Of a stretch of 64,000 nucleotides of DNA, positions 3,709-63,934 are shown one piece after another (the first letter of the stretch is position 1; every line of letters starts with the position of its first letter). Made by a program: the position numbers and the translations under genes. Under the pieces are notes generated by a model, which was given only the letters and a program-made list of their open reading frames with translations, had not been told where the DNA came from and did not search any database. Source of the DNA: Monocercomonoides exilis PA203 (Eukaryota > Protista > Preaxostyla); contig LSRY02000040.1 of the NCBI GenBank assembly GCA_001643675.2, positions 914,992-978,991 of the forward strand. The letters are read 5' to 3'.

Positions 3709-5161
3709 TTAAGCATTCACAAAATAATCAGAAATATTCAATGATAAGCCATCATAGTATTTTCTGTTCAAAAAATCAAAGATTTTATGAAAACTCTCAA
3801 TGCAATCTTCAAATTCTTCTTCCTCCATCTTTTCAAATATCCTTCTTTTCAATTCTTTTCGTTTTGTTTCGTCCGTTTCTTCATCCTCCTTTTCTTTCAA
3901 TCTTTCTGAAATGCTCAAAAAGAAAAGCAAGCCATTCCACATAATATCATCATCCAAAGTTGATTGATTCATTTCTTCTGAAAACGCAACTATTGTGCCT
4001 TCCTTTAGTAAAACATCAATTTTCACATTTCTCTTTTCTGCTGCACTTTTTAAAGTAAAAATGCAATCACGGCTTATATCTGGGTAATTATCTCTTGATG
4101 CTCGAAACACTTGAACAATGCAGCTGATAAGTCCTACAAGTTCTTCATTCCACAATTCGCAGAAGTAAAAGTAATCATAAATTGCATCAAGCCATCTCCA
4201 GATTATTTTCACTTCTTTCACTTCCTTTCCTCTTTCTCCTTTTCTCTTCCAGTCAATACATCTCATCAACTCTTCCAATTCCCTTCTTGCCTCTCTTGTA
4301 AAATGCAGCTCATTCACTATCACTTCTTCCAAGCTTTTGTCGTTGGAAAATCTGTTTATCAAAAAGTTCCAAGCGCGCTGATAGGAAAGCTGAGTGAGGT
4401 TGTGATGCTCCTGATGATATTTGATGATTTCTGTTATCCCGTTCAAATACAGTTCTTGTTTTATTTCCTTATTAAAATCAGAAAAAAATGCAAAGGTATC
4501 AAAAAGGAAATAGAAGCGAACATACGCAAAATTTGCTAATGTGACTTAAAGCCAGTAAAGCTATTTCCACTTCTTTTTGAGTCTCCTCGTTTTCCTCCTT
4601 GTTCAATGCAACTTTCAGAAGGCAAGGTACGATGTTTGAAAGCAATTCATCAGGAATGCATTTATCGCAAAGCAAAAGATAACATTCGCAAAGATCAACC
4701 AAAAGCCTTTCGTTCTTTTCTTCTATTCTCCTTTCTTCTTCAATTATCATCCCTGGCATTCTTTTACTCAATGATGAATCATCAAAAGAATAACAAAAAA
4801 AGCTTTTCAATTCCTTGCGATATCCAGCTTGCTTCAACAACAAGATTGCGTTTCTCCAAGATAATGTCTTTTCTTTAATCATTTGGTGTATTTTATTGAA
4901 TAGTTCTTCTGTGAAAACAGTTATGAATTCTTCTTCATCCATTTCATTAATAATTTCATTCATTTCCCTGATTTTCTGCATCTGTTCCTCCTCATCGCAC
5001 TCTTCAAGTCCATCAAACAATTCTATAATCGGAGTTCAAAAACCAAAAAAAAAATCTTTAAAAACCATTTTTTCCAAATTATTGAGCAAACTTGAAAACT
5101 TTTCATTCAAAGGCATCTCTTTCTTTCTGCAATGAAGCTCATTGTCACAAGACGATTTCAT
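3709..5161 (-). CDS. Helical-repeat-like multigene family, copy A (441 aa; exons 5161-5092, 5022-4526, 4467-3709)
   Basis: Two GT-AG introns (5023-5091 GTTTG..ATAG; 4468-4525 GTATG..TAAG) join the ORFs in frame. Shares family motifs LCECYL, VPCLLKVAL..EE.EETQKEVE.ALLAL and ELHF..EA.RELEEL...DWK. Confidence 0.85.
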
Positions 5162-8100
5162 CTGTTTTAAAATTTATAACTCTCTATTTGTCAAAACTGG
5201 TTTTTATCATCAAAATTTGAGATAAACACAAACATTGTTGATTATCTTGCAGTTTTAAAACGATCGCTTTCAAATTGTTTTGTTTTTGCTTTATAAAAAG
5301 AAGAGCAAAAGAAATTGCGAAGGAGCAGCAAGGATTGCTGTATGATGCAAGAAATGAGAATCTTTTGTTTCTTTTTGATCAAACCAAAAGATATTTCAGA
5401 TGAAGAAATAGATTTCGATTTTCTTTCACATTTTGTTAGTTGAGTTCGTTTTTTATTGGTATGAAATTGGGTATGCTTGTTACACAGAAATTGAGATTTT
5501 CAGAAAAAAAAAAGAAAAAAAGCAATTTAATTTCATAATAGAATATCATTTTTCGACTGTTTTCAAACAATGTTCAGATTGATAATAATGACTACAAATA
5601 ATTGCATGCTCAATGAATTCTATTTTATTATTTTCTTATTTTTCAATTTTCAGTTTTCATTCAAGATGATTCATCAGATTTGTGAAGGAAAAAAAAAGGC
5701 GAAAAACCAAAAAATATGAAAGAAATTGTCGACTCAATTCGAAAATCAGTCAAACAGCAGAAGAACATGGCAAAATGGTTTTGAAGCGAAATGAGCAAAT
5801 AATGAAAATTCTTGAAGGTTCATCTTTAACATCAAGGATAGCAGGACAAATGATTGATGGAAAACTAACAATGAATAAAGATGACATTTTTCTTTTGTTT
5901 TCATCAAACACTTTGGGAAATCAAAAATCCTTATGACTTGGATTGAAAGGAGATCAGATGAGAAATGTTGTGAAGGCAGCTGTTCCATGAGAAGCATTCA
6001 TGAAGCATTTCAATTCAACAACACCTTCAATAGTTCATCAAAACTCCAGAAGAAATGAATCAGAGAGTTCTGCTGCTAAGCCAAATGAATGAAGAGAGCT
6101 AAAGGGAAATCGTGTTCTTTGTCTGAATTCCATTTTGCACACACTTTTCTCTTTTTTGGAGCAAGCCAGAAACTCTTCATTGGACTTCAATGGCTAATGA
6201 GAATGAATGGATATCCCTTTTTGAATCTCTCTTCAACCCTGCCTTTTTCTCTTTTTCCTCAGCGAAAAACACACTCAGTGAAAGAAGAAACACCTGTCTC
6301 TTCACTCATTTCTCATCTGACATTCTCAGGATGTTTCATCTTCTGCATTGGCTTCTCTGCAAAAAACATCTCTTGTCAAATCATCCTCCTTTGTGGTTGC
6401 TGAACATGCTGAAATGACACGATAAACAACAACAGCAAGTTCAGTGGTGATTGAAAGACAGTTGAGCAGGCTTTGGGTGAATCAAAAGAAAGAAGTCTTT
6501 TTTGATGTGTTTTTTGAATTCTGTATGAAATGATGATGATTGTCCGAAGAATTTCTCCTCATCATCAATTTCTTTCTTTTTCTTCCTCTCCTTTCCAAAC
6601 AATCTTCCTCATTGCTTCTACTTTCTTCGCTTGGATTTCTTGAAACCTGTTAACCAAATTGTTTTTTGGATACTGTTGCCTTCCTTGTTGGGTCATCCAA
6701 ATAAGGAGGAGAAAAAGAAAAAGAAAAAGAAGAACATTTCGAAACAATTGTTGTTGATGAAGAAGGAGAAAAGAAATATGAATTTCATCTGTTTTGAATG
6801 TTCAGCTTGAATGAAGAAGAAGAAACAGAAAAGGACTTCCTTTGTCTTTTTTCTTTCTTCTTCATTGTTTCCTTCAAAACAAAATTATAAAATCTCATTT
6901 AAAGATTTTAGAAAGAATAACATCGCTCCCCCAATTTTCAGAGGAAGAAAAAAATATATTATTTAATATTCTCACATTTTGTTTAATGTAGACAGTGATG
7001 CAAAAGAAGAGGAAGACGTTAATGTTAATGTTGAAGCCTGTGTCAATCTGTCTGAATGAAGTGCAAATATGACATTTTTTTCGAATAAATACCTTCATTC
7101 GTAACATTCTCTTATTTTTCTTCCTTCTTTCTCAGCTCGTTTCTGCCTTCATCTCAGATTCTCCCTTTCTCTTTGATTCATTCATAACAACCATCTCCGT
7201 TCATTCAACGTCCCATTCTCCTCTTTTCTTCAATGCAAACATTCCACGTTGTTCATCTCATTATCAGATTTGTCTTTCCTCTTCCAAATGAGCAATCGCA
7301 CATTCAACATCCAACAACTCATCCATTTTGTGTGCTCTTGAGACAGAGTTTTATTCCATTCTGTCTGAAATATGGTTATCGTCTGTTGATTGATCAAAAC
7401 TCACCAATGGCTTGGTTCTGTTGATTTTGCACTTTCATTCTTTGAGGATGCTCAGATGAAATGAATGAAGCTGTTTCTTCGAAGAAACAAGAAACATCAT
7501 TGAAGATGGTTGTGTGTTGTCTGATCGTGTGCAAACTGTTTGGCTTGATGAAGTGCATCAATTGCCAAAATTCAACAGAAATGTGGAAGAAGAAGATGTT
7601 TGTCACAAATGAAATGAAATGAGTCACAAGAACTCTTCACTGGAAGATGAATGGCAAAGGCGAGGAAGAAGTCTCGTTGTGAACAAATGGTCTTTCATTT
7701 GACCACGTTGCATAAGGAAAAAGCAATGAGCGAAAGAACTGAATGTGATAAAGAAAAAAAAAATGGCTTTCATTCAAGATGGTGAGTTAAAAAAAGGGAG
7801 AGTTGCATTGTTGAGTGGTTGAAAATAAGAAGCAGTTCTTCATTAAAAAAAACGCCCAATCCAATCAATCGAATTGAACAAAAAAGGGAAATGAGGTACT
7901 TTTATAAACATCATACACGTTATTTGAATCCCAATAAGCAACAAAAAACTTGTCAAACTCGCTCCATGTTGCAACATGAGAATATGATGGTGATTGCATT
8001 CGGCCTTTTTGTTCAACAATTCCCTTTCACGAAGCAATTGTTCTTCTCTTCTGCCAAGATATTAAAAAATATCGTCAATGAATATTTCAAAAAAGAGTGA

Positions 8101-9166: not shown

Positions 9167-10581
9167 ATGAGCGTCACCGAAAAGTTCACTGGTTTGCATC
9201 CATTGTTGCGTTTTAATTTTTGGGAATTGCATTTCTATCTTTCTTTATAATTTTGAAGCATTGTTTGATGGACTTGGAGAGTGCGATGAGGAGGAACAAG
9301 TGCAGAAAATAGAGGAAATGAATGAAATGATCAATGAAATGAATGAAGGAGAATTCAAATCAGTTTTCACAGAAGAACTGTTCGATAAAATTCTCCAAAT
9401 GATTGAAAAAAATTCATTGTCATTGGAAAAGGCAATTGTGCTGTTGAAGCATGTTGGTTCTTGCAAGGAATTGAAAAGCTTTTTTTGTTATTCTTTTGAT
9501 AAATCATCGTTGAGCAAAAAAATGCCATCGATGATAATTGATGAAAATGAAAAGATAAAGGATGAAAAGGATGAAATGCTTCTTATTGAACTGTGTGAAT
9601 GCTTTGCTTGGCTGAATGAAGATTTTATTTCAAAGGAATTGTTTTCAGTCATTGTTCCTCGCCTTCTGAAAGTTGCCTCGAAGAAAGAAGAAAACGAGGA
9701 AACTCAAAAAGAAGTGGAAATGGCTTTGCTGGCTTTTAGTCACATTAGCCAATTTTGCGTATGTTCGCTTCTATTTCCTTTTTGATATAATTGATTTTTT
9801 TCCCTTGTTTTTTGATTAGGATGTTCCAAAAGAACTGTATTTGAGTGAACTCAAAGAAATCATCAAATATCACCAGGAACATTCCAGCCTGACGCATCTT
9901 ATCTATCAGTATATTTGGCAGTTTTTGATTTATAGATTTTCCAACGACGAAAGTTTGGAAAAAATGATTGTGAATGAACTGCATTTTGTGGGGGAAGCAA
10001 GAAGAGAATTAGAAGAGCTTTCAAAATGCATCGACTGGAAGAGAAAAGAAGAAGGAGGAGTTAAAGAAGTGAAAGAAGTGAAAATAATTGGGAGATGGCT
10101 TCTTGTTATTGATGATTTCTTAAACTGGTGCAGATCATGGAACGAAGAACTTGCTGGACTTATCAGCTGCATTGCTCAGGTGTTTCGAGCATCAAGAGAT
10201 AATCTCAAAGATATTCGCAATGGATGCCTTTCTTCATTAAGAAGAGCAGTGGAAAAGAGAAATGTGAAAATTGATGACTTTTTGAAAAGTGGAGTTATTG
10301 ATCTCTATTTGGAGGAAATGAAGCAATCAACTTTGGATGATAAAATTATGTCTGATTGCTTGTATTTCTTTTTGAATATTTCAAAAAGATTGAAAGAAAA
10401 GGAGGATGATGAAGATGAAAAAGGAAAAAGGAAAGAAATGAAAAGAAAGATATTTGATAAGATGGAAGAAGAAGGATACGTAGATTTCATCGAAAGTTTT
10501 CGTGAAATGATTGATTTTTTGAACAAAAATGGTTATCGTGAATTATCAAAAAATACTTCTGATTATTTTGTGAATATTTAA
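9167..10581 (+). CDS. Helical-repeat-like multigene family, copy B (428 aa; exons 9167-9191, 9259-9758, 9820-10581)
   Basis: Introns 9192-9258 (GTTTG..GAAG) and 9759-9819 (GTATG..TTAG) keep the frame. Homologous to copy A. Exon 1 is shorter because of an upstream in-frame TGA at 9125. Confidence 0.85.
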
Positions 10582-11484: not shown

Positions 11485-11735
11485 CTTTCAAGCTTTTTTT
11501 GTGCAAGGTTTTGATAAATTGCTTCACTCATAGCTTTATTTCACTTTATTAGATTTTAAAATAAATCTGATTTTATATCCTTAAACATGCATCGTTGAAA
11601 TCAAAACATAAAGTTTTCCAACATTTCACTAATATCAAAAAATGTTCCTTCATTTATAATGTTTTTTGATCTCAAAAAGTCAATGAAAAGTGCATAATTT
11701 CTCAATGAAAATGCTTGAAGTTAAATATTTTGTCC
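11485..11735 (+). repeat. Dispersed ~250-bp non-coding repeat, copy 1
   Basis: Direct, highly similar copy at ~29935-30185, with shared blocks such as AATTGCTTCACTCATAGCTTTATTTCACTTTAT and GCATCGTTGAAATCAAAACATAAAGTTTTCC. Confidence 0.85.
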
Positions 11736-12881: not shown

Positions 12882-15014
12882 CTAAACATTAGCCAGCAAC
12901 CACTTCTCCTCCACTGCATATCTCACTGCCGACGCAAACTCCAGCGCCAAATCCAAACATCCAAACTTCACCACGAAAAACTGCTTCTCATCGCTCCCAA
13001 ACTCCACATAATTCACTCTCACACACAGCTCGTCTCCTTTCACTCCCTCAACAGCACAATGCGTACAACATAACTTCTTCCCTGCTTTTCCTTCTCCTGT
13101 CAATCCCCCTTTCTTTTCATTCTGCTCTTTTCTGCTCTTTTCTCCTCCATTCACTGTGGATGAACCTTTCTCCGATTCAGCTTCTCCTTCTCCTTCTCCT
13201 TCTGCTTCTGCTTCTGCTTCCAAGCATGCCTTTTCATAGGCGACAAGTGAAGAAATGGAGTATGACGCATCGACTGAGGCAAAGAGACGGTCATCGCTGC
13301 TGAGAGCAGACTTCAGAGAGGAAATGGAGTTCAGAAGAGCATTTGATGAGGTAGATGCAGACTTTGATGATGAAAATGAGGAGGTAGAGGAAGAAGAAGA
13401 AGATAATGATGATGAAGCAGAAGCAGAAACAGAAGCAGTGGAATTCGAATGAGGTCCGAATCTTTTCTGAGAGGTGAAGTGTTCGGCAATGCGGAATCTG
13501 GAGACGGTGATGATGTGTCTTGTCCACTCAGCCCCCTTCCCGTCCACCGAGTGGAAGCACATGCACTGGAAGAACGGCCTCTCTCCAAAGGGAAGCGTAA
13601 ACCGCACGGGAATGCCCCTCACCAGCGGCTTCATCCGCATTAGAAGAGGGATCTCGTGTCCAGACACTTCGGCCTCTTCCTCCCTCTCCACACACCAGTT
13701 GTAGATGCTCAGCTCAGCAGAGCTGTCCACATATGCTGGCACAAAAGAAGAGGAAGAGGAAGAGGAAGAGAAGGAGGAAGCAGATGAAGGAGGAGAAGAA
13801 GAAGAATCATTGGTGATGGGAACTCTGCCTGAAATGACAGAAGAAGGCAGATTGCACATGGAACATAAAGGAATAGCAGTGTTTGGAGAGACAGCGTAGC
13901 AGAGAGAAAGAGGAGAAGAAGGAAGAGAAGCCTTCACAGCAGACGAGGCGATGTCCATGAGGGCGTTGCGTATGCGAGTCATGCGATAGACAGAAGCAGT
14001 GGAAAAGCTGAGTAAAGGAGCTGAAGGATCAGCAGTAGAAATGCCGATGATTTGGCAGCTGCATCGGAAGGGGTGGACAAAGTGGAGTTTGGAGATGTGT
14101 CTGTTGTCGATGCAGCAGAGGAGGCGCAGACGAGAGGCAGAAGAAAGATAGAGAGAGGAGAAGGAGAGGGAGAGGGAAGAAGAGGAAGAGGAAGAGGAAA
14201 TGGAAGAAAAAGAAGAAGATGACGATGATGAAGGTGACTGTGATGATAAAGTGGAAAACGGTTGGGAAGATAAGACATTCCAGTTTTTGTTGTGCATGAA
14301 GATGGCTGAGTGCTTTGCGGCTTCAGTCATTTCTGCCTCACCCAATGCAAGTGGATGTGTCTTCAGCTCTTTCTTCCACTCGTTCATCATCTCCACCTCC
14401 AGCTTCGTGGCTGAAGGAGGCAGATATTCCCTTTCCAGGTCGATTCCGTTCTCAAACACCCCAATCATCACCTTCTCCGCTGTGATCTTGTCCTTCATCT
14501 CTTCCGTCATGTTGTTCCGCTTTGCCATTTTGCCTGCTCCCATGTTCCCTTTCTGGCTCAATCCAGACTCTGCCTGCGAAGCCATTGAAGGAATAGGAGA
14601 TGTCTTGTTCGATTCTTCCACCCCTTTCTCTCCGCCTTGTTTCTGCTGCATCTTCAGCTGTTGTCTCTCTCTCCTTGCGCTCCCAGGCATCAGCAGCTTG
14701 ATCTGCCCTTTCTCCTTCGCATTCTTCGGGTAAGTGTCCGCCAGCTGGAAGAAGAGGGTGTGTGTGGTGGTGATGGCACAGAAGCCAAACAGCATCTGCT
14801 TGTTGAGACAGACCACGCCGAAGGAGCTGGCGAGGAGGTGGCTGCGAAGGAGGATGAGGGAAATGGGAGAGAGTGAAGAGGAAGGAGAAGGAGAAGGAGA
14901 AGAAGAAGAAGAAGAAGAAGAAAGGGAAGCCTGAGAATGTTCATTTGGCAAAGGAGTAGGAGGAAGAGGGATTGGTGGTGGTGATAATGGAGAAAGAGAA
15001 TGAGAAGAAGAATG

Positions 15015-15050
<36 letters not shown>

Positions 15051-27000: not shown

Positions 27001-27543
27001 CTCCTTCTCTCCTCTTCCTCTTTCCTTCTTCTCTCCTCCTCTTCCTTTCTCATTCTTTCTTCTTCCTCTTTCTTCCTCTTCTCTTCCTCTTCTCGTTTCG
27101 CTCTCTCTTCCTCTTCTTTCTTCTTCCTTTCCTCCTCCTCCTTTCTTAATCTATCTTTTTCTTCTTCTTCTTTTCGCTTTCTTTCCTCTTCTTCTCTTTC
27201 AATTCGTTCTTCTTCCTCCTTCTTCTTCCTCTCCTCCTCGGCTTTTCTTTCTGCTTTTTCAATTTTCTCCTTCTCCTTCTCCTTCTCTTCTTCTTCCTTC
27301 TTCTTTTTATCTTCTTCTTTCTCTTTTTCTTTTTCTTTTTCTTCCTTCTCTTTCTCCTTCTCTTTCTCCTTCTCCTTCTCCTTCTCCTCAGATACTGTTG
27401 ATGCTGTTGTAACAAGCCCAGAAAATGCACTCGGAGTGTTCAAACTGACTGTTGCTTTGACAGTCGTGAAGACAGAACTCTCTCTTCCACTCTGCATTTC
27501 ACTTGATAATGAAGAAGAAGAAGAAGAAGAAGAAGAAGAAGAA

Positions 27544-27579
<36 letters not shown>

Positions 27580-32976: not shown

Positions 32977-34460
32977 ATGTGTTCAAGTTGCCTTTTTGAA
33001 GCAGAAAATGGATCAGAAGAGACATTGGCGTTAAAATTGTTTGAAGGTTCAGCATTTGTTCATGCGATAAAATTTTCATTCTTTCTCTTTCTCATTTTGG
33101 TTTTTCAAAAGAAATGCTTTTCAAACTAGAGGATTGTACAGCTGAAGATCAGCAAAAAATTATTGAGAAAATTTTTGAAATTATGTGGGACTTGAATGAG
33201 GAAGGAATGCGTTCTGTTTTTTCTGAAGAGAATTTCGAAAAATTGAACAAAATGATAAAAAAGAAGATATTATCTTTGGACAATGCGCTTTTGTTGATGA
33301 AGAGCATCGGATATTGCAAAGTGTTAAAAATGTTTCGGAGTGTAAAATTTGTTGAATCTTCTCTGTGCTCGGACTTGGAGTCAATGATAATTTGTGAAGA
33401 AAAGAATGAAAAAGAAGAAAGCGAACGTGGAGCAAACATCAAAGAGAGGAACGGAAAGTTGCTGACTGACCTTTGCGAATGCTATCTGATGGTTAACAAC
33501 CTCTTTTCAATCGAATTGTTATCGATTTGTGTGCCTTGCCTTTTGAAAGTTGCATTGAAGAAAGAGGAAAGTCAGGAAACAAGTGAAGAGGTGGAGATGG
33601 CTTTGCTGGCTTTGAGCAATATTGAATATAGTGTATGTTTATTACTATTTCGTTTTTGACGTTATTGAATTGTTATTTCCTCCTTTTTTGGATAGGAATT
33701 GAAAATAGAACTGTATATGAATGAGATCAAAGCGATCATTGAACATCATCAGGAGCGTCACAACCTCACTCGACTTGCCTATCACTCGGCTTGGCAGTTT
33801 TTGATAAGCAAACCTTATTTTGAGAAGGAATTTGAAGATTTGATCACAAACGATCTTCATTTTGTGAAAGAGGCAACACGAGAACTGGACGAGCTGATGA
33901 AATGCGTGGATTGGAAGAAGACAGAAAAGGACTTAAATAAATCGAAAGAGGTGCAGATAATATGGAAGTATCTGAAGACAGCTTGGAAATATTTTTCAAA
34001 ATGTCAAGCATGCTGTGAGCGGATACAATTCAATGAGTTTGCTGAAGGAGTTGTCAAACTTTTCAAAGCAGCAAAGGAGTGTGAAAGAAGTTTACAGACA
34101 GAATGCGCTTTCCTGCTGATGCAGATGACATTGGGCAAAGCAGAAAAAATCGATATTTTTGTGAGGAGTGGAGCAGCAGGATGCATTGTGGAGGAGATGA
34201 GGCAGCAGACATTGGGAGATCGCTCAATTGTCATATGCATCGCAGCATTTGAAGCACTTTCAGAAAGATTGAGCAAAAAGACCGACAACACATTCAAGAA
34301 AGCGAAATGGAAGATGATCAAAAGAGAGATATTTGACAAGTTTGAAGAAGAAGGATATGAAGATATCATTACGAGCTTTCAGGAGATGATGAGCGCTCTG
34401 AAAGAAAGATGTTGGTTCAGACTGTCCGAAAATTTGTCAGGCTATTTAATCCATATTTGA
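32977..34460 (+). CDS. Helical-repeat-like multigene family, divergent copy C (451 aa; exons 32977-33046, 33112-33632, 33696-34460)
   Basis: Same intron positions and phases as the other copies (33047-33111; 33633-33695). Motifs LCECYL and VPCLLKVALKKEES.ET.EEVEMALLAL. Confidence 0.85.
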
Positions 34461-35084: not shown

Positions 35085-35565
35085 TTTGAATGGAATGAAA
35101 GGCATCATTGACAGAAAAATGTTCGGTTTGCAAACATTGTTTCACTCGAATTCTTGATGACTATTTTATTTCTTTCCTGTTTATTTTTTCTTTTTCAGTT
35201 TTTTTGAAGAATTGCATCATAATCTCGATCGATGAGCTGGAGCGAAGCCAAAGAAGAAAATGGAAGAAACAAACGGGATATGTCAAAAACTTAAAGAAGA
35301 AGAAATCGATTCTGTATTTTCTGAAGGATTATTCAACATGATAGGAAAAATGGTTGAAGAAGAGAACTTGTCAGCTCTGAATTTCGTCACTCCACTGAAG
35401 CTTTTGGGATAACAATGAATTGGCAAACTTGTGAAGCATTTGCCGTTTTTCAAAAAATATGACAGTTTATTATGTGCTAGCTTGAGGAAATGAGATTCAT
35501 TCCATTATGTAACTCCAAAATGGTATCTATTTCTTTTTCATCATTTCACAGAATGACCACAAACC
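35085..35565 (+). pseudogene. Internally deleted relic of the multigene family (5' part plus 3' flank)
   Basis: A GTTTGC..TTGAAG intron-1-like segment is followed by ..KMEETNG..EEEIDSVFSEGLFNMIGKMVEEENLS..LKLLG-stop. Next comes a 52-bp block (35512-35563) that is the exact reverse complement of 48470-48521, in the 3' flank of minus-strand copy E. Confidence 0.65.
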
Positions 35566-36359
35566 CAGGCATTTGAAGTTTTTGTGAAAAAATGCTTGTT
35601 TTGTTTGCCCACTCATTCAAAATGAAGTGGAGCAACAACAAAAGAAGAAGTCAGCTACTCTTATTTTGAGAAGTTCATTTGAATGAAAGTGTTTTGGAAT
35701 GGAAGAAGAAATGCTCAAATGAAAAAGGAAGAATTTCAAATGACAACCGAGTGAATGAAGAGAATCATCAGAAGATATTCTTTTCTGACAAAAAACAAGT
35801 GAAATGATTGGGAGAGCTTTTGATGCTGATTGGAAGAATGGACAAACAGGTGAATAAAAGGGAAAAAGAATTCATTTTTGATTGACAACTTCAGAGAAAA
35901 ATATTATGAATGATTTTATCATGCTTCTTCTCCTTCATCAATTTGTTTGCTTCTTTATTCTGCAATTTCAATATTTTCAACTGGTTCCTTCAGCAAACAA
36001 TTCTTTCTTCATTTCTTTTGGATTCTTCTCCAACATCTTTTCTTTTTCATTGAAAATATAATCAGAAAGAGAATAAGCAAAGGAGAGCAGAGGATTCAAG
36101 AGGCAAAAACTGAACAATTGAACACATTGTTCAAAATGAATCTTGTTGATGAAGATGGAGGGCAATAATCAATTCAACGAAGATTCTTGATGGAATTTTT
36201 TAAAAAGAAAAGAATTTCTTATTTTCATTTTTTAAAAAAGGGAAATAAAAACCATATTTTAATTCATTCAATTCTTGTTTTCCTCCCATTTTGTGAAATG
36301 AATAAAAAAGAAAAGAAAATATTATTTTAGAGTCACAATTATCATTGAAAAGAATTTGG

Positions 36360-37811
36360 TTAAACGTTAATAAAATAATCAGAAGTATTTTTTGATAAAC
36401 CATCATAGTATTTTCTATCCAGAAAATCAAAGATTTTATGAAAACTCTCAATACAATCTTCATGTCCTTCTTCTTCCATCTTTTCAAATATCTTTCTTTT
36501 CTTTTCTTTTCTTTCCTCCTCTTCCTTTTCATCTTTATTCTTTTCTTTCAGTCTTTCTGAAATATTCAAAAAGAAATAACAACAATTCTTTATCAAATCA
36601 TCATTAATTGTTGGCTGCTGAATCTCCTCCAAAACAGCACCAACAGCTCCGCTTTTCAACAATTCATCAATTTCCACATTTCTATTTTCTGCTGCATGCC
36701 TAAGTGTATATAGGCATCCATTTAGAATTTCTTTGTAATTTTCCCTTGATGCTCGAAATACCTGAACAAAGCTGTAAAGAAGTCCAGCAATTTCTTCTTT
36801 CCACAATTCGCACGAGGAAAAGTAATTATCAATAACATTAAGCCATCTCCTTAAAATAGACACTTCTATTCTTTCATTTTCTTCTTCTTTCTTCTTCCAG
36901 TCGATACATCTTGTCAGTTCTTCCAATTCTCTTGTAGCTTCTCTTGCGAAATGCAATTCATTCACAATCACTTCTTCCAAGCTTTTGTCGTTGTAAAATC
37001 TGTTTATCAAAAACTGCCAAGCTGATTGATAGGAAAGCTGAGTGAGGTTGTGATGCTCCTGATGATATTTGATGATTTCTGTTATCCCGTTCAAATACAG
37101 TTCTTGTTTTATTTCCTTATTAAAATCAGAAAAAAATGCAAAGGTATCAAAAAGGAAATAGAAGCGAACATACGCAAAATTTGCTAATGTGATTTAAAGC
37201 CAGCAAAGCCATTTCCACTTCTTTTTGAGTTTCCTCGTTTTCTTCTTTCTTCAAGGCAACTTTCAGAAGGCGAGGCATAATGACTGAAAACAATTCCTTT
37301 GAAATAAAATCTTCATTCAGCCAAGCAAAGCATTCACACAGTTCAATAAGAAGCATTTCATCCTTTTCATCCTTTGTCTTCTCATTTTCATCAATTATCA
37401 TCTCTTTCATACTATCGCTCAATAATGAATCATCAAAAGATTCTAAGTAAATTATTTTCAGCTCTCTGTAATACCCAACATGCTTCAACAGCAAGATTGC
37501 GCTTTCCAATGATAATGTCTTTTTCTCAATCATTTGGTGAATTTTATCGAACAGTTCTTCCGTGAAAACTGATTTGAATTCTTTTTTTTCCATTTCATCA
37601 ATTAATCCATTCATCTCTTCGATTTTCTGCTTTTTCTCATCTTCTGTGCGATGCTCCAGTTCATGGAGCAATTCTGCAAAGGTTATTCAATAAAAACAAA
37701 AATTTTGTTCAGAATTGTTCAATCCAAACAAAAGAACAAACTTGAAAACTTCTTGGTTCTGGTCATAGCTTGAACTCCTTTTTCACATTTATCATCATCG
37801 CACACATTCAT
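36360..37811 (-). CDS. Helical-repeat-like multigene family, copy D (441 aa; exons 37811-37742, 37673-37174, 37115-36360)
   Basis: GT-AG introns 37674-37741 and 37116-37173 keep the frame. Family motifs are present. Confidence 0.87.
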
Positions 37812-43400: not shown

Positions 43401-46223
43401 ACATGTATTCGGGGTCATCAGGACGGGAAGATATGTTCGAAAGATACAAATGGTGAGTGATCTGCGAAACAGTCGCAAGCACCTCCAACATCGACGATGA
43501 GCGGAGCGTCTGCCTTTTGATGTCTATCACCTCCGTTGTCTCTCCGTCCTGTTCCTCTTCCTTTGTGGTCATCGTGAAGAAATACGTGCTGACGTCTGCT
43601 GTCTCCCACACCTCCAAGTTTGTGGTTGACTGGTGGATTCTGCCGAGCATAGAGGCCAGGCTTTCTGATGTATCATCCATCATCTTCAGCAGATCTTTCT
43701 TCTGAATCATTCCTGATGGCCACTTATCTGAAGAAGTCGGGGTTGTGAAGTTGTACCTTTTGTCGTACACAAAGAAGTTGTACCCGATTGTGGCTGAACG
43801 CGCTGAATGATATGACAAGTCGCACACATTCCGCAGCGTTTGCAGGTTGCTCTGATACGAATTCGTCATAATGATATACACAACCAGGGCTGCCACAAGC
43901 ACACCAACGTTGATGAAATTCAATGCGATAACTGTGCATTTCAGTGCTGCAATGTTGCTTTCATGATTCCCGTGCTCGCCGTGCCCTCCCATCACCAGAT
44001 CGACAATCGCTGCTTCTTTCTTCTTTTTCTTTCTCCTCCTCCGATTTGTTGTGCGATGCCTTCTCATCCCACTCGAAGACTGCTGCCATTGCGCCTCGCT
44101 TCTCGCAAGAGATTCGCGATCTCCTTCCAAATTCTGCGCTTCCAATGAAGAACCCTCTGCTCCTTTGTCTCCATTGGTGCCATCCTTAACGCTCCCTGTA
44201 TTCACCTCAAAGCTTCCCCGCCTCACAACGCGAGGCATATTCGCCTCATGCTCTGCACCCGTCCTGTCTCCCCCTGCGCTTCTCCTCCCGCTCATCTCGT
44301 ATGCCTCTCCCATCCCAAACGACCCATCGTGGAAGCCTCCAGCGTGTGTATGTGCCATCGACTCGCTGGATCCGTAGTCCTCTTCAATCTGCTCTGCCCG
44401 GTTCAGAATCATCTCTGCCTCATCTTCGTCGTCGTATATGTCCAGCAGCAGCCGAGCATAGCTCCGCAGCACACCTGTGTTCTGTCCATGCGAAGCAATC
44501 AGCTCTTCGTAGCTTTTTCTAGCAACACTCTCGTCCTTCACAATCGAATTCAACAGAACAGGAATCGCCTTGTAGTCTGGCTGGATAGCTGTCGCGTTCT
44601 CAAAGAAGTCCTTCATCGCACTCACAGCCTGCTCGTGGTGCTTCTCTGCCTTTGCCAGCAGCGTCGTGAAGGCAAACGAGTTCATGTTGCCTGCCCCGTT
44701 CCCGCCGTTTTGCCCATTTGCGCGCCCTCCGTTCTCTTTTGCCTTGCAGAACAGCACAAAGTTCAGAAACATGCCCGGAGAAAGCGACCGGGCTTTTTGG
44801 ATGAGCGTGTTTGACTTCATGTAGTTTTTGCGGTAGGCAGACAGAAACGTCGCATACTGGAAGCACAGCATGCTGTTGTTCGTGTTCGTCTTCAGTGCTT
44901 GAGTGTACACGTAATCCGCAAATGTCAAATACATCATCGAATCATATTCTTTCTGTTGTATAAAGCGAAGGGATGGCTCCACTCTTTCTGGATTCCTCAA
45001 AGGAGGCAGAGCCAAAGAAGGATTTTTCATGCAAATATCGGACAGCTGGTTGCCAAAGGCTGTTAAAAGATACTTTTTCTCTCTCATCTTTCGGCCAATC
45101 TTGGGCAACAGCACTGCACAAGCAACAATTCCCGCTATTAGTCCAACAACTTGAAGCACAATAGTAATAATCCAGTTGTCTGTTGCTCCTTCAATTGCAT
45201 ACAGAATTTCGTCTATAAGTCTCAAACATCCAAATATGCACCATTTACTGCCCATAAGCAGATTTCCATTCAGTTTGTATATCGGCTGAATATACACAAA
45301 ATACACCATCATCACCAGAGAAGATCCAACAGTTACCACTCCGCGCCAGAATGGCCATTCAATCAGTGTTCTCATCGCAAACACACATCCAAACACAAGT
45401 GACGAGTCCACCGCTTGCCACAGCCCACTTGGCGATGACCATAGCCCACCATGCTTCGGATTATGGTTGAAAATCATGTTGTTTATAAATATTGAAGATA
45501 TTAGAAGAACAATAAGAACCAGCATTGACACAATAAATCCCAAAAACGATAACAATGAACCCGAGCAACTGCCTTCAAATCCCCGATGGACCATTTGTCC
45601 TTCGGATTTATAGCAATCAAATATAGTTATGCATATCGAAGTCAATGGGATAAACAAGATGGTGTATGTAAAGTTCACAAGCCAGCGCAAAAGTGAAATG
45701 ACCCACGGCTGCGAGCCAGAAATAACGCCTTGAAAAATCGCTGTAACCGCTATGTATATAATGAGCAATGCCAAATATCCTGCGCATCCTATTATTACAA
45801 ACGAAACGTAATTTCCTGCTAAATATCCAAGAGACGTTCCATCTGGAAAGCCAACGCACTAACAGTCGCATGAATAAAAAATTTAACCCCAAAAAATATG
45901 CATTCATCAAGTTCAGGATTGCGGAATGATAAATAAATCACAATGGAAAAAATACAAAGATGAAAATCGCAAACCAAAGAAACTGTATTCACTTTTTGCG
46001 TGGAAACGTCAACTCGAAAGAAACTGAGTGTAATCATCTGAAGCACTGTGAATGCCCATACGAAAATTTCCCATGTTTTGCTCGGATGTTTCGGTTGATG
46101 GTAAATAGGTGAAAAAAATGAAAATCCAACTGTTTCCAGTTTACTGAAACCTTCTGCTTGAGCATATTCATTCGTCATCCCACTTGATGTCGAACACATC
46201 GACATGCTCTCTTCGCTGGCCAT
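40444..46223 (-). CDS. TmcB/TmcC-like multi-pass membrane protein with a TPR-like region and a C-terminal hemerythrin-like domain (~1,887 aa; exons 46223-45975, 45858-40444)
   Basis: Intron 45859-45974 (GTTTG..TTAG) joins the ORFs in frame. There is an N-terminal block of about 9-10 hydrophobic helices and a TPR-like YEELIASH.QNTGVLRSYARLLLDIYDDEDEAEMILNRAEQIEE typical of TmcB/C. Two further TM-loop-TM modules follow. The C-terminus has TGHDSFD...FNEEEREM...Y....HKREH...HFTDED, which is hemerythrin spacing. Confidence 0.8.
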
Positions 46224-48907
46224 TTTTTTTGACCTCTCTTAAAATAATAAACAAAAATTTAACGAATGGTTTTTATGATGATCAGTATCCATATTTTTTG
46301 TTTTTCTTTTTTTATTATTTGAAAAATTTTCCGTTTCATCATATTATGCATCTTTTATTATTCAAAACAGAAATATGTTATAAGAAAAAGAAAGACTTTT
46401 TATTTAAAAGAAAAAAAGAAAAATATCATTAACTCTTTTTGTTTCAATTGCAGATTGTGCAAAAAATTTTGAACAAGATCGATCTCTCAACAACCACAAG
46501 AAGAATTATTCTGAAAATATCATTCGAAATCCTATTTCTGTTAGATTTCAATTTATTTTTAAACAATATTCAGTCGAAACAAAAATGAAAGTCTAGGATG
46601 CCAATTGAGTTGGTGATGAAAATATGTTTTTTGAAGAAAAATATCAGAAATTTCCCTCTTGTTTTTATTGAGAAAGCAATCTTGTATTCAATTTTGTGAC
46701 ATGTCAAGTGTTTATTGTTCCATCTGTTATGAAACATGAAAAAAAACTTTTCCATAAAAAAAGGAACAAGGAATGATTTTTGCATTAATTAATAAAACAA
46801 ATTCAAACGACAGTTATGTTAGTTAAAAATTCATCTTAAAAAATAGATTTTTTTTTTTTTTTCAATCAAAAAATTCCGCAACTATGTTTGTTATATCAAT
46901 ATTTGATCTTTTTAATTGAAAGACTGACACTTTTTGTAATCACACTTTCGTATTATTCTTGATATAAAATATCTTCTCAGTTCGATTTTTGTCAAAATAT
47001 GTTTCTGCAATCATAATATCAAAAACAATAAGAGTTCCCAAAAATAAATTATTTTTGAAATAATCCAAAAAAGAAAAATATTTTGATCAAAACTAGAACG
47101 AAAGTATGATTTCAAAAAGGATCAGCCATATTAGCATTTCAATGAAATTTATCACAAAATGGCAAAATTCTTGGTAAAGTTTTTTTGTTTAATTTTCAAA
47201 TAGAATAAAAATGTCATGTTTCGATCTAATTTCTGTTCCCAATCATGAAAATTCACAAAAATGGAAATAGTAACATTGTTGAGATATTGTTTTCATAATG
47301 GCAAAGTTTGGTGAGTTGGTACAGAATTTTTATCGAAATTTAAAATTTTTTCTTTATTTGATAATTTAACAAAAGGAACATTACAAAAAAATTTTGACAA
47401 ATATTATCCAAAACAAAAAGAGAATAAAAAATGGAATTTAATGGATAGCAATTCATTTTAAACAACAACGTGGGAAGTATTTAAATAAACCGTTCAAATA
47501 ATTAATGAATGCGTTTTATTCACTTGGTGTTTTTTGAGTTTTGCAAAAAATTTTTTTGAAGTTTTCCCATTGACAAAAAATTTTCAAAAATGATTGCTTT
47601 TCATTCAGTCAAAACGAGCAAACTGCAGAAAATGAAAAATAACTAAAATAGTTCTTTCCATAGAAAAAATATGCGCTATGCACAAAAGAGGCTGATGATA
47701 ACTTAACGTAGTCACTGAGAACATTTTTTAAATCTATTTATTTATTTATGTTGTGTATTAAATGATAAATAAAAAAACAAATATATTCGATAATAAAGAA
47801 TATTTCAAATATTTTTCAACTTATTTTTTATTAAAAACATCTTAAATACTTTTTAATTTTAATAAATAAAAATATAAAAATTTTATTATCCCGAAGTCTT
47901 CAAAGTTGAATCTTGTTTTAAAATCTAAATTTATTAATATATCTTTCATTTTATTATATGTGTTGTTAAATAAAACTTAAATGCGAAACATCCTTTTTTT
48001 TATAATTTCAAAAATTGATTGCTCCCGCAATATTTAACTTTATTATTGGTTTTTTTTCAAAAAAAATGTAATGTTAAAAACCAAAATTTCGATTCCAAAC
48101 GTGATTTATTTTTTCTATTTAATCACGTTTTATTAATGTTTCAAAATTTTGTGAACATCTCAACGACTACGAAAAGTTATCAGATACCACAAAAGACAAA
48201 TTGAATCGTTTTGTTAAGATATAAAAATTCATCAAAAGTCAGTTTTTCTGAAATGAAAAAGATTTATTTCAAAAAACATTCAACACCGCAATTAAAAATT
48301 TGTGTATGAATAGATGTCATATATGCTAATATACAAGTGTGCAAATTGCTGGAAATTGATATTGAATATTTATTGAGATATTTTAATTTTAAATTTTTGT
48401 CCTGATAAAAACAAGTCCGGATAAAAAACCACCCTAAGCATTTTTTCACAAAAATTTCAAATACCTTATTTTGTGGTCATTCTGTGAAATGATGAAAAAG
48501 AAATAGATACCATTTTGGAGTAACAAATACAAATACAAAAGCATCAATTTTTGAGTTAAAATTTAAATATGATTCTCTTTTTCTCAAACATTAACAACAT
48601 GAGCTGATAATTCATCACGCAATTTAACAAAAATTATCATTGAAAAAGGATGCAAACAACCATTTGCTGATAAAGGGTATAATCAAAAAAGAAAAAACAA
48701 GCACAATGATAATCATTATGTGAAGAATCTCATTTCTTCAAACATTTACCGAACAGTAAGAAGCAGATAACACAGAAAAAAAAATTATTGTTTTTTTAAC
48801 AAAAAACGGTCAAAGTCTTGTTGGATCATAAATCAATCAAATCAAAAATAAATAATCAAATAAAAGAAAATAATTAAATATTTGTGAACAAAGTGAGTTT
48901 CTTTTTC

Positions 48908-50360
48908 TCAAACATTTACAAAATAATCTGAAATAATCAATAACAAAGCATCATTATATTTTCCATTGAGAAAAAAAACATTTTATGAAAACTCTCAATG
49001 CAATCTTCACAACCTTCTTCCTCCATCTTTTCAAATATCTTTCTTTTCGTTGTCTTTCTTTCAATTTCTTCCAATTTATTATCCGTCTTTTCTTTCAATC
49101 TTTCTGAAATTTTTCTTAACAAAGACAAACTTTGCACTATTGAAAAATTAACCAAAGTTGATTGCTTCATTTCCTCCAAAAAGATTCCAATAGCTCCGCT
49201 TTTCAAAAAGTTATCAGTTTTCACATCTTTATTTTCTGCTGCTTCTCTTAACGAATTAAGGCATTGTAATTGAATTCCAAAGTAATTATCTCTTGATGCT
49301 CTATACACTTGACAAATGCTTCTGATAAGCTCAGAGTATTCTTCATTCCATGATTTGCAATTGTGAAAATAAATCTCCAACATTTTGAGCCATCTCTTTA
49401 AAACAAGCTCATCTTCAGTTTTTTTTTCTCTTTCTTCTTCTTTTCTCTTCCAATCCACACTCTTTGACAGATCTTCCAGCTCTCTTGCTGCCTCTTTCGA
49501 AAAATGAAGTTCATTTGTAATCACTTCTTCCGAGCTTTCATCGTTGTTAAATCTATATATCATAAACCTCCAAGCTGATTGATATGCAAGTCGTGTCAGA
49601 TTCTGATGTTCCTGATGATATTTGATGATTTCTGTGATTTCATTCAAATACAGTTCTTGTTCAATTTCCTATGCAAAAAAGGAAGAAAATGCAATTTAAC
49701 AATATCAAAATGGTAAAAAGGTTCTCAAACCAAATTTCCAATATTGCCCAAAGCCAGCAACGCCATTTCAACTTCCTTCTGAGCTTCATCGGTCTCGTCT
49801 TTCTTCAATGCAACTTTCAGAAGACAAGGCACAATGATTGAATCCATTTCAGATGAAGGCCATCTGTTCAACAACAAATAGCATTCACAGAGGTCAATCA
49901 GACGCTTTTCGTTCTTTTCTTCTTTCTTCTTCTCATTTTCATCAATTATCATCTCTTTCATTCTTTTGCTCAATGATGAATAATCAAAAGAATAAAATGG
50001 AATCTTTTTCAGCACTTTGCAAAATCCAGCATGCTTCAACAGCAAGATTGCGTTTCCCCACGATAATGTCTTTTCTCCAATCATTTGGTGAATTTTATCG
50101 AACAGTTCTTCCGTGAAAACTGATTTGAATTCTTTTTTTTCCATTTCATCAATTAATCCATTCATCTCTTCAATTTTCTGCATTTGTTCAACTTCTCTGC
50201 AACGTTCCACTTCACAAAACAATTCTGCAATAGAATTTAAAAAAACAAAAATTATGTTCAGAATTGTTCAATCCAAATTAAAGAACAAACTTGAAAACTG
50301 TTCTGTTCTGGCCGTAGTCAGAATTTCATCTTCAAAATTATAATCATCAAACAAACTCAT
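48908..50360 (-). CDS. Helical-repeat-like multigene family, copy E (exons 50360-50291, 50224-49731, 49668-48908), with a 1-nt frameshift near the 3' end
   Basis: Introns 50225-50290 and 49669-49730. The ORF ends at 48937, but the family C-terminus (..LNGKYNDALLLIISDYFVNV-stop at 48908) continues in another frame after the A run at ~48971. Confidence 0.8.
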
Positions 50361-54727: not shown

Positions 54728-56161
54728 TCAAATATTTATAAAATAATCATAAATATTCAATGATAAACCACAAAAATATTTAAAGTCTAGAAAAGAAACT
54801 ACATCGTGAAAGCCAGCTATAACATCTTCGTATCCTTCTTCTTCCATCTTTTCAAACATTTCCATTTTTGTTGCATTTCTTTTCACTTCTTCAGATTCTT
54901 CATCCTTCTCTTTCAATCTTTCTGAAATATTCAAAAAGAAATACAAGCAATCATACATAATTCCATCATCCAAAGTTGATTGCTTCATTTCCTCCAAATA
55001 GAGACCAACAGCTCCACTTTTCAAAAAGTCATCAATTTTCACATTTCTCTTTTCTACTGCTCTTCTAAAAGTAAAAATGCTATCACGGCTTATATCTGGG
55101 TAATTATCTCTTGATGCTCGAAACACTTGAACAATGCAGCTGATAAGTCCTACAAGTTCTTCATTCCACAATTCGCAGAAGTAAAAGTAATCATAAATTG
55201 CATCAAGCCATCTCCAGATTATTTTCACTTCTTTCACTTCTTTAACTCCTCCTTCTTCTTTTCTCTTCCAATCTACACTCTTTGACAGATTTTCGATTTC
55301 TCTTCTTGCCTCTCTTGCAAAATGCAGCTCATTCACAATCACTTCTTCCAGGATTTTGCACCAGAAAAATCTTTTTGTCAAAAAGTTCCAAGTGGACTGA
55401 TAGGCAAGCTGTGTCGGATTCTGATTTTCCTGCTGATATTGAATAATATCTGTTATCCCATTCAAATATAGTTTTTGTTCAATTTTCTAATTAAAAATCG
55501 AAAAATATGCAAAAATATCAAAATGGAAATTGAAATGCTCATGCAGTTCCATCATCAATGCAACTTAACGCAAACAAAGACATTTCCACTTCTTTTTTGT
55601 TCTCCTCGCTTTCCTCTTTCTTCAAGGCAACTTTCAGTAGACAGGGCACACAAATAGACAGCAATTTTGATAAAAATGAATAGTTGAGAAAAAGATAGCA
55701 TTCGCAAATGTCAACAAAAAGTTTTTCGTTCTTTTTATCTTTTATCTGCCGTTCTTCCATGTACTTTTCCCTTCTTTTGCTTAACATTGATTCTTTAAAG
55801 CTTCAAATGAAAAATTTTTTCTTCACATAGAAACGACAAATGCGCTTTAGGAATACGAATGCATTTTCCAAAGTCAATTTCTTTTTTTTAATCATATCAT
55901 CTATTTTATTGAACAGTTTTATTGATAAAATGGATTCAATTTCTTCATTATTCATTTTCTCCATAGTTTTATTCATTTCAAGGATTTTCTTTCTCTGCTC
56001 AATTTCATACCTATTTTCCAGTTCAGAAAACAATTCTTCCAAAATAATGCAAACATATCAAATGTAATGTTTCAAAGTTTAATAATAATTCGCAAACTAT
56101 AAAAGTTATATGTATATGACAGCTCCTGAACATCATCATTAGATTTAGTAATATTGCACAT
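54728..56161 (-). pseudogene. Helical-repeat-like multigene family, copy F, probable pseudogene (exons 56161-56098, 56035-55545, 55486-54728)
   Basis: In-frame TGA at 55803-55805 in exon 2. The intron-2 donor is GCATGA instead of GT. Exon 3 is intact. Confidence 0.75.

Positions 56162-63893: not shown

Positions 63894-63934
<41 letters not shown>

What the first reader, a model, noticed from the sequence alone, without database searches (positions are those of the whole stretch)
3709..56161. Subtelomeric gene family whose copies are mosaics of one another: candidate gene-conversion diversification system
Seen: six three-exon paralogs are divergent overall, yet different pairs share short identical blocks. 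A 4055-4224 matches F 55071-55240 (170 bp, 1 mismatch). A 4379-4544 matches D 37027-37192 (166 bp, including all of intron 2). B 9557-9653 matches D 37279-37375 (97 bp, opposite strand). D 37527-37620 matches E 50078-50171 (94 bp). At protein level A and B share KELKSFFCYSFD, B and F share DWKRKEEGGVKEVKEVKII and RRAVEKRNVKIDDFLKSG, A and D share EDCIESFHKIFDFL.RKYYDGLS, and B and D share SKNTSDYF. No single duplication tree explains this. Known: segmental gene conversion diversifies subtelomeric VSG and var repertoires, with pseudogenes as donors for VSG. Inference: these proteins have no signal peptide or TM segment and look like ARM/HEAT-type solenoids. This would then be an intracellular shuffled repertoire (e.g. 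recognition or adaptor proteins), not a surface antigen.
Basis: partly seen in the sequence, partly recalled or inferred. Interest (0 to 1): 0.85.

Follow-up and report, generated by a model that had tools for sequence, protein, structure and literature searches.

The report
Mosaic ARM-repeat gene family, Monocercomonoides
Six neighbouring genes near a chromosome end of the protist Monocercomonoides exilis are true patchworks of one another, but they belong to a genome-wide family of several hundred armadillo-like repeat proteins whose copies swap short DNA stretches by ordinary recombination repair, mostly with nearby copies, and not by a dedicated telomere-linked variation system.

Summary
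The window is the telomeric end of M. exilis contig C37. It holds six three-exon paralogs and one relic fragment. All four reported identical blocks are exact: 170 bp with 1 mismatch, and 166, 97 and 94 bp with none. The backgrounds around them are 66-77% identical.

Recombination tests are decisive. PHI gives z = -16.9. Shared runs reach 56-112 polymorphic sites, against at most 32 in 2000 permutations. Segment trees conflict with 91-100% support. The A-D block contains all of intron 2. The A-D and A-F blocks are pair-specific genome-wide. An RNA contig from a separate study crosses one boundary.

- The family is not subtelomere-specific. There are at least 34 copies along C37 and many on other contigs, 275 annotated proteins and 333 clusters at 50% identity.
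- Shared blocks also occur at internal loci, and their frequency falls with distance: 35% of pairs under 60 kb apart, 0.9% of pairs on different contigs.
- Tracts lie anywhere in the gene, including introns and flanks.

The proteins are acidic armadillo-like solenoids (pLDDT 82) under purifying selection (dN/dS 0.4), with hypervariable helix faces in three C-terminal repeats.

Best reading: generic ectopic gene conversion in a monoploid organism reported to lack end joining. This scan's first readers noted similar mosaics in other families of this genome; I did not check them.

The parts
3709..5161 (-). Copy A = MONOS_12071 (P0001, 441 aa). Exons 5161-5092, 5022-4526, 4467-3709; introns 5091-5023 (69 nt) and 4525-4468 (58 nt, GTATGT..AG).
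   Evidence: Local translation of the exons equals P0001. The intron 1 joint 5022->5092 is seen in RNA contig X5. RNA contigs cover 3916-4186 and 4599-5183.
9167..10581 (+). Copy B = MONOS_12070 (P0012, 428 aa), head-to-head with A.
   Evidence: tblastn of P0012 gives 100% on 9820-10578 and 99.4% on 9252-9758. ORFs. RNA contigs at 9594-9688.
33075..34460 (+). Copy C, the divergent member (57-61% DNA identity to the others). It shares no significant block with them.
35206..35487 (+). Short relic fragment of a seventh family member.
   Evidence: tblastn of family proteins
36360..37811 (-). Copy D. Reading frames of exons 1-3 look intact. No protein identical to D was among the listed database proteins.
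48937..50360 (-). Copy E. The C-terminal ~15 residues are out of register with the family (indel near aa 420-435).
54728..56161 (-). Copy F, a probable pseudogene. It has an in-frame TGA at 55803-55805 (family aa ~101), and no GT is seen at the expected intron 2 donor.
4055..4224 (.). A-F conversion tract (= F 55071-55240). 170 bp, 1 mismatch. Covers aa ~271-327, including the hypervariable helix 273-291.
   Evidence: Genome-wide, only A and F are at 99-100%; the next copy is at 87%. RNA contig 4019-4186 crosses the left boundary with 0 differences.
4379..4544 (.). A-D conversion tract (= D 37027-37192). 166 bp, identical. Contains all of intron 2 plus 19 nt of exon 2 and 89 nt of exon 3.
   Evidence: Genome-wide, only A and D are at 100%; the next copy is at 90%.
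9557..9653 (.). B-D conversion tract (= reverse complement of D 37279-37375). 97 bp identical, inside a ~240-bp stretch of 95-100% identity. D is the likely donor.
   Evidence: The nearest third party of the block is L005 (89.7%), which is also the nearest relative of D's flanks.
37527..37620 (.). D-E conversion tract (= E 50078-50171). 94 bp, identical, in exon 2.
61100..64000 (+). TTAGGG-type telomeric repeat tract that ends the contig. This is context only; it was not sent to any search tool. The start coordinate is approximate and taken from repeat-family coordinates; only 62800-64000 was read.
   Evidence: The window is C37:914992-978991 of a 978,991-bp contig.

Best explanation
The six genes belong to a very large, so far undescribed Monocercomonoides exilis family. 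Members are acidic proteins of about 430-445 aa built of armadillo-like helical repeats, and no signal peptide was detected. There are at least ~300 gene models, spread over many chromosomes.

The family evolves by duplication, divergence and occasional decay, under overall purifying selection. It has a conserved scaffold and hypervariable exposed helix faces in three consecutive C-terminal repeats.

The patchwork comes from non-allelic (interlocus) gene conversion. A break in one copy is repaired by homologous recombination from a paralog, which pastes in about 95-250 bp of donor DNA. The transfer includes introns and silent sites. The template is usually a copy on the same chromosome and preferably within tens of kb.

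Shown here: the mosaic, its statistical significance, its pair specificity, its dependence on distance, the fold, the selection regime and transcription of A.

Inferred: the repair mechanism. M. exilis is reported to be monoploid and to lack non-homologous end joining while keeping a full homologous-recombination set (PMC6759080). Paralogs are then the only templates available before replication. On this reading, new combinations of variable segments are a by-product, not the output of a dedicated machine.
For: Mosaic and significance.

DNA-level transfer, not constraint. The A-D block includes the whole intron 2 and all silent sites. Background dS is 0.45-0.8. The blocks are pair-specific in the whole genome, with next-best copies at 90% and 87%.

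Not subtelomere-specific. There are at least 34 exon-3 matches along C37 and many on other contigs. Internal pairs share exact runs of 125-173 bp.

Proximity dependence at equal background identity of about 71%. Exact runs of 60 bp or more occur in 12/34 pairs under 60 kb apart, 9/124 more distant same-contig pairs and 2/223 pairs on different contigs. Fisher p = 1e-4 and 4e-7.

Tract starts are spread from the 5' flank to the 3' flank.

Fold. The AF2 model has pLDDT 82.4 and pTM 0.78 and is all helical. Foldseek hits are designed armadillo proteins and beta-catenin. Atlas TM-scores are 0.6-0.68 to SPAG6, ARMC3/4 and importin-alpha.

Selection. Median dN/dS is 0.40, and 4 of 32 copies have stops in exons 2-3. 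Scaffold helices are at 0.11-0.3 and variable helices at 0.6-0.74.

Reality of the sequence. An RNA contig from a separate study spans 4019-4186 with no difference and shows the intron 1 splice. P0012 (B) has the same sequence in the eukprot and NCBI sets.

Repair background. NHEJ is reported absent, HR complete and cells monoploid (PMC6759080).
Against: - Homologous recombination between sequences only 70-77% identical is normally strongly suppressed. A relaxed or special mechanism is therefore not excluded.
- The 32 copies analysed were chosen by similarity to copy A and are enriched for contig C37. Pairs are also not independent, so the distance effect is robust in size but its p-values are approximate.
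- Donor and acceptor polarity is unresolved for all but one tract.
- Hypervariable helix faces with a post-hoc dN/dS of 1.9 would fit selection for diversity.
- No biochemical function is known, and there is no Pfam or PDB sequence match.
Confidence: 0.72

Rival explanations
1. A programmed diversification system of the VSG/var type. A repertoire, with pseudogene donors at chromosome ends, is deliberately shuffled to vary an intracellular recognition protein, possibly with exclusive expression.
For: - Short recent tracts occur between strongly diverged copies.
- A copy with a premature TGA (F) shares tracts with the transcribed copy A and with B.
- Hypervariable helix-face positions in three consecutive repeats have a post-hoc dN/dS of 1.9.
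- The family is very large.
Against: - The family and its mosaics are genome-wide, not subtelomeric.
- Tracts are not focused on the variable region. They include introns and flanks.
- Frequency follows physical distance.
- Most copies are intact and under purifying selection, so they are not a silent archive.
- RNA contigs of both A and B are in bulk culture.
- No expression site or tract-associated motif was seen.
- A rough, inferred estimate of about 1e-6 events per gene per generation would be enough to explain the five recent tracts.
Confidence: 0.1
2. Assembly or polishing artefact. The identical blocks were written into the Nanopore assembly by mis-mapped short reads during Pilon polishing.
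For: - The assembly was polished with Nanopolish and Pilon (PMC8767320).
- One base next to a block (9656) differs from all read sets.
Against: - Reads from a copy 25-30% different do not map, so they cannot overwrite 95-170 bp. The blocks have sharp ends inside otherwise divergent genes.
- An RNA contig from an independent 2024 study covers 4019-4186 with 0 differences and crosses the A-specific/shared boundary at 4055.
- Contigs of the 2016 DNA runs cover the region.
- Protein B is identical in the eukprot and NCBI sets.
- The same pattern is seen in many other pairs.
Confidence: 0.03
3. The shared blocks are segments under strong purifying selection, or chimeras from single unequal crossovers, and not conversion tracts.
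For: Some short runs (about 59-81 bp at alignment column 725) are shared by several copies. These may reflect conservation or an older shared origin.
Against: - The four main blocks are pair-specific genome-wide.
- They include an entire intron and every silent site.
- They lie in different gene regions for different pairs.
- They are internal, with divergent sequence on both sides, so there are two breakpoints. A single crossover would give one.
Confidence: 0.03

Closest known systems
Interlocus (ectopic) gene conversion in clustered multigene families, such as plant NLR clusters, MHC genes, primate segmental duplicates and yeast subtelomeric families (own knowledge)
   Same: Tracts are short and have two breakpoints. 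Introns and silent sites are transferred. Trees conflict along the gene. Frequency falls with distance and is higher within than between chromosomes. The family shows birth and death with some pseudogenes.
   Different: The partners are unusually diverged (about 70-77% identity). The host is a monoploid metamonad reported to lack end joining. The family itself is undescribed.
Mosaic formation in Trypanosoma brucei VSG and Plasmodium falciparum var genes
   Same: Segmental conversion between diverged paralogs creates new mosaics. A broken copy takes part in exchanges.
   Different: No signal peptide or membrane anchor was detected by a crude hydropathy scan. The family is not confined to subtelomeres or to an expression site. 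Most copies are intact and constrained. Nothing points to exclusive expression or to immune pressure.
Armadillo-repeat proteins (importin-alpha, beta-catenin, SPAG6/PF16, ARMC3/4; designed armadillo repeat proteins)
   Same: The predicted right-handed alpha-solenoid has about 40-45-aa helical repeats. Foldseek probability is 1.0 and TM-scores are 0.6-0.68.
   Different: There is no significant match to the Arm/HEAT Pfam models or to any PDB sequence. There are no accessory domains. All 120 named hits listed are from M. exilis.
Large lineage-specific families of metamonads: M. exilis tyrosine-kinase-like kinases (332 genes, called the largest family in PMC6759080), Trichomonas BspA-like proteins and Giardia 21.1 ankyrin proteins (the last two from own knowledge)
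   Same: It is a massive lineage-specific expansion of a repeat or scaffold protein. It probably contributes to the 35% 'unclassified repeats' of the assembly (PMC8767320).
   Different: The fold differs, and the family is unnamed because no Pfam model matches. By cluster count (333 at 50% identity) it rivals the kinase family. That count may include entries from two annotation versions and fragments.

Membership tests
Armadillo/HEAT-like alpha-solenoid (ARM-type fold) | Tandem ~40-45-aa helical repeats stacked into a superhelix | tested here: met
   The AF2 model has pLDDT 82.4 with 22 helices in a regular series. Foldseek PDB E-values are 7e-5 to 1e-3 against designed armadillo proteins and beta-catenin. 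Atlas TM-scores are 0.6-0.68 to SPAG6, ARMC3/4 and importin-alpha.
Armadillo/HEAT-like alpha-solenoid (ARM-type fold) | Sequence match to the Pfam Arm/HEAT models above their thresholds | tested here: not met
   No family reaches its cut-off. The best sub-threshold hits are Rcd1 and TPR_TRIP12_N, both helical-repeat families. The profile found no PDB sequence hit.
Armadillo/HEAT-like alpha-solenoid (ARM-type fold) | Ligand-binding groove lined by the third helix of each repeat | not testable with these tools
Only helix periodicity of the hypervariable sites in helices 273-291, 318-333 and 362-382 could be shown.
Antigenic-variation type conversion systems (VSG, var) | Segmental conversion producing mosaic genes | tested here: met
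Antigenic-variation type conversion systems (VSG, var) | Product exposed on the cell surface (signal peptide, membrane anchor) | tested here: not met
   In 60 members the N-termini are mostly hydrophilic (median 0.16). The median maximum 19-residue hydropathy is 1.45, with a maximum of 1.87 in some members. Net charge of A is -28. This is a crude hydropathy test only.
Antigenic-variation type conversion systems (VSG, var) | Repertoire concentrated at subtelomeres or at an expression site | tested here: not met
   Copies lie along the whole of C37 and on more than 30 other contigs. Internal pairs are equally mosaic.
Antigenic-variation type conversion systems (VSG, var) | One copy expressed per cell | tested here: inconclusive
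   RNA contigs match both A and B in bulk-culture libraries. Contigs cannot show per-cell expression.
Antigenic-variation type conversion systems (VSG, var) | Pseudogenes serve as donors | tested here: inconclusive
   F has an in-frame TGA and shares tracts with A and B. Polarity could not be resolved.
Multigene family with generic interlocus gene conversion and birth-and-death | Conversion frequency falls with physical distance and is higher within than between chromosomes | tested here: met
   35% of pairs under 60 kb apart, 7% of more distant same-contig pairs and 0.9% of pairs on different contigs share exact runs of 60 bp or more, at equal background identity. The sample is biased toward C37.
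Multigene family with generic interlocus gene conversion and birth-and-death | Tracts ignore coding structure (introns, silent sites and flanks included) | tested here: met
   The A-D tract holds all of intron 2. Runs start at alignment columns from 131 (5' region) to 1639 (3' flank).
Multigene family with generic interlocus gene conversion and birth-and-death | Mostly intact copies under purifying selection, with some decayed ones | tested here: met
   Median dN/dS is 0.40. 4 of 32 copies have stops in exons 2-3. There is a relic fragment in the window.

The most novel reading that the evidence does not exclude
The family is an intracellular recognition or adaptor repertoire. It would have a constant module (conserved repeats, aa ~150-260) and a variable groove (helices 273-291, 318-333, 362-382). 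In a monoploid cell without end joining, break repair templated by paralogs keeps reshuffling the variable segments among neighbouring genes. Selection would keep the family clustered so that this by-product works as a diversity generator. That would be a non-surface, non-immune-evasion counterpart of var/VSG mosaicism.
Probability: 0.15. Interest if true: 0.7.

Novelty: new member of a known kind. Interest (0 to 1): 0.42.

Why it matters
- It names and delimits a very large protein family of the amitochondriate model protist M. exilis that had gone unnoticed. By cluster count it is comparable to the kinases described as the largest family. It likely explains part of the 35% 'unclassified repeats' of the assembly.
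- It gives a clean, quantifiable case of short-tract interlocus gene conversion between strongly diverged paralogs, in an organism reported to be monoploid and to lack end joining. This makes it a natural system for asking how break repair works when only homologous recombination and only paralogous templates are available.
- The constant-scaffold, variable-face pattern offers a testable lead to function.
- It is not, on present evidence, a new kind of diversification machine.

Tried and rejected
- Pfam on the exon ORFs of A, B and C gave nothing above threshold.
- A profile of 60 members against PDB sequences gave nothing.
- Donor/acceptor polarity by third-party similarity was ambiguous, except that D is the likely donor to B.
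Copy positions therefore rest, and the 32-copy sample is biased toward relatives of A.
- The supplementary tables of PMC6759080 are not held. No paper links Monocercomonoides with armadillo proteins of this kind or with gene conversion.
- Taxonomic range could not be set. Only the best 120 to 150 hits are listed, and all the named ones are M. exilis.
- Logan contigs are short unitigs. They could not bridge most tract boundaries or show the intron 2 splice.
- No self-joined spliced model was sent to any search tool. Exons were searched by reference, and full-length work used the database's own records (P0001 and others). A's exons were joined only inside a local script, to check identity with P0001.
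- The TTAGGG tract was read once and sent to no search tool.
- Explanations rejected: selective constraint, single unequal crossover and a polishing artefact (see rivals).

Full report
**Where the window lies.** The last ~2.9 kb of the window are TTAGGG-type repeats (only 62800-64000 was read). The genome tool places the window at C37:914992-978991 of an 82.3-Mb, 101-contig assembly. The best protein match to copy A is 'MONOS_12071 [Monocercomonoides exilis]', on a contig of 978,991 bp. The window is therefore the telomeric end of an M. exilis contig from the ONT assembly of Treitli et al. 2021 (PMC8767320). An earlier first-reader note had guessed an oxymonad, and one search confirms it. I sent no telomeric letters to any search tool.

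**The observation.**
- A self-BLAST with copy A finds five further copies. Six-frame translation shows the same two long reading frames in each. tblastn with family proteins finds exactly six full copies and a ~280-bp relic at 35206-35487.
- The four reported blocks are exact: 170 bp with 1 mismatch, and 166, 97 and 94 bp with none.
- Whole-gene identity is only 66-77% among A, B, D, E and F, and 57-61% to C.
- A sliding-window table shows the patchwork. D matches E at 95-100% in columns 240-330. B matches D at 95-100% in 480-700. A matches D at 100% in 690-840. A matches F at 100% in 1020-1200. B matches F at 93-95% in 1230-1340.

**Is it more than chance?**
- The PHI statistic is 0.353 against 0.435 +/- 0.005 in permutations, z = -16.9.
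- Runs of agreement at consecutive polymorphic sites reach 112 (A-F), 93 (A-D), 61 (B-D) and 56 (D-E). The largest run in 2000 permutations was 32.
- Maximum-likelihood trees of five gene segments support five different sister pairs, at 91-100%.

**Conversion, not constraint or artefact.**
- Gene A's structure was fixed by matching the local translation to the database protein P0001. The exons are 5161-5092, 5022-4526 and 4467-3709, with introns of 69 and 58 nt.
- The A-D block (4379-4544) contains the whole of intron 2. Silent-site divergence elsewhere is 0.45-0.8.
- Searching the whole genome with the A-D and A-F blocks finds only the two partners at 99-100%. The next copies are at 90% and 87%. 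The blocks are therefore recent pairwise DNA transfers.
- They are internal, with divergent sequence on both sides. That excludes a single unequal crossover.
- Against a polishing artefact, reads 25-30% different would not map. An RNA contig from a separate 2024 study covers 4019-4186 without a difference and so crosses the A-specific/shared boundary at 4055. The same data show the intron 1 splice (5022->5092, GT..AG on the minus strand).
- Protein B has the same sequence in the eukprot and NCBI sets.
- Logan contigs are short unitigs, so most other boundaries could not be bridged. Raw long reads remain the clean test.

**What the family is.**
- Exon 3 of A finds 140 scored places in the genome out of 2005 first-look candidates. 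At least 34 lie along C37, from 55 kb to 970 kb, and many are at internal positions of Mb-sized contigs. A DNA search gives the same picture.
- The protein database holds 275 matches, and all 120 listed are 'uncharacterized protein' of M. exilis.
- A profile of 60 full-length members finds 333 clusters at 50% identity among 1.84 billion representatives. 285 of them are below 1e-30.
- The published description calls the tyrosine kinases (332 genes) the largest family. It suggests that part of the 35% 'unclassified repeats' are expanded protein families. This family is of similar size by cluster count and has no name because no Pfam model matches. I found no paper on it.

**Fold.**
- AlphaFold2 with the 60-sequence alignment gives pLDDT 82.4 and pTM 0.78, with 22 helices in a regular series.
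- Foldseek against the PDB returns designed armadillo-repeat proteins and beta-catenin.
- The ESM Atlas returns SPAG6, ARMC3/4, importin-alpha and related armadillo proteins at TM 0.6-0.68.
- The proteins are acidic (net charge -28 for A). A crude hydropathy scan found no hydrophobic N-terminus typical of a signal peptide in most members. The median maximum 19-residue hydropathy is 1.45, below the usual TM threshold, though some members reach 1.87.
Membership by sequence model is not met.

**Selection.**
- Across 32 genomic copies, the median pairwise dN/dS of exons 2-3 is 0.40. Only 4 copies have in-frame stops there, among them F (TGA at 55803-55805). E has a disturbed C-terminus.
- Scaffold helices have dN/dS of 0.11-0.3. 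Helices 273-291, 318-333 and 362-382 have 0.6-0.74.
- In those three helices, which are about 45 residues apart, the most variable positions follow an i, i+3/4, i+7 pattern opposite nearly invariant positions (W281, C324, F371/F372).
- Fourteen such sites give dN/dS of 1.9. They were picked for variability, so this is suggestive only.
- I infer, but could not show without coordinates, that these are the third helices of consecutive repeats and form a variable surface beside a conserved module.

**Is it a subtelomeric diversification system?**
- In an alignment of 32 copies, long exact runs are common at internal loci too: 173 bp for L016-L027, 170 bp for L004-L013, 145 bp for L013-L016, 137 bp for L010-L016 and 129 bp for L012-L026.
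- At equal background identity (about 71%), runs of 60 bp or more occur in 12/34 pairs less than 60 kb apart, 9/124 more distant pairs on the same contig and 2/223 pairs on different contigs. Fisher p = 1e-4 and 4e-7.
- Pairs are not independent and the sample is biased toward relatives of A, but the effect is large.
- Tract starts are spread over the whole unit, from the 5' region to beyond the stop codon.
- RNA contigs match both A and B.
- None of this points to a telomere-linked or targeted process. It is the expected signature of interlocus gene conversion during homologous repair.

**A mechanistic rationale from the literature.** M. exilis is reported to lack non-homologous end joining, to have a comparatively complete homologous-recombination set, and to be monoploid (PMC6759080). 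Before replication, a broken copy then has only paralogs as templates. This is inference. It predicts that other M. exilis families are mosaic as well. Two unchecked first-reader notes on other pieces of this genome report that for receptor and beta-helix families.

A rough estimate, also inferred, shows that no elevated rate is needed. Five mismatch-free tracts among six genes require on the order of 1e-6 events per gene per generation, if a 100-170-bp block stays clean for about 1e5-1e6 generations.

**What remains unusual.** The partners are only 70-77% identical, a divergence at which recombination is usually strongly suppressed. The family combines a conserved scaffold with hypervariable faces. 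A selected role for the shuffling therefore cannot be excluded, and I give it about 15%.

**Verdict.** 'Subtelomeric' and 'system' are not supported. The finding is a new, very large ARM-like family showing a known evolutionary process. Its interest is moderate.

Noticed in passing
window 28689-29444 (+): A 251-aa ORF matches glycosyl hydrolase family 25 (lysozyme/muramidase; E = 7e-27, above cut-off). It is a bacterial-wall-degrading enzyme gene in the subtelomere of a bacterivorous flagellate.
   Followed up: partly
window 12882-27932 (-): An uninterrupted ORF of 5016 codons runs through a GAA/GAG-rich (Glu-rich) low-complexity region. It was not analysed.
   Followed up: no
window 40444-45774 (-): A 1776-aa ORF has a TPR_TmcB match (E = 1e-16).
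   Followed up: partly
L014 and L020 (G000:C37:~106.2 kb and ~109.6 kb): Two family copies lie in inverted orientation 3.3 kb apart. They are 93% identical overall and share a 1185-bp identical run. This is either a very recent inverted duplication or a long conversion tract.
   Followed up: no
window 9656: The assembly has T. All contigs of two DNA runs and two RNA runs read A here, 3 nt beyond the B-D block. This is either a residual assembly error or contigs of copy D laid on B.
   Followed up: no
window ~63410-63470: The TTAGGG tract is interrupted by a short non-telomeric stretch with GGGTT/GGGGTT variants before canonical repeats resume.
   Followed up: no
window 35508-35597 and 48436-48525: A 90-nt inverted repeat, 93% complementary, lies in intergenic DNA next to copies C/D and E and outside the gene units.
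   Followed up: no
P0001 in the ESM Atlas: Fourteen 'hypothetical protein' clusters without recorded taxa score about 0.95 by language-model features. These could be relatives in metagenomes, for example gut oxymonads. They could not be retrieved.
   Followed up: no
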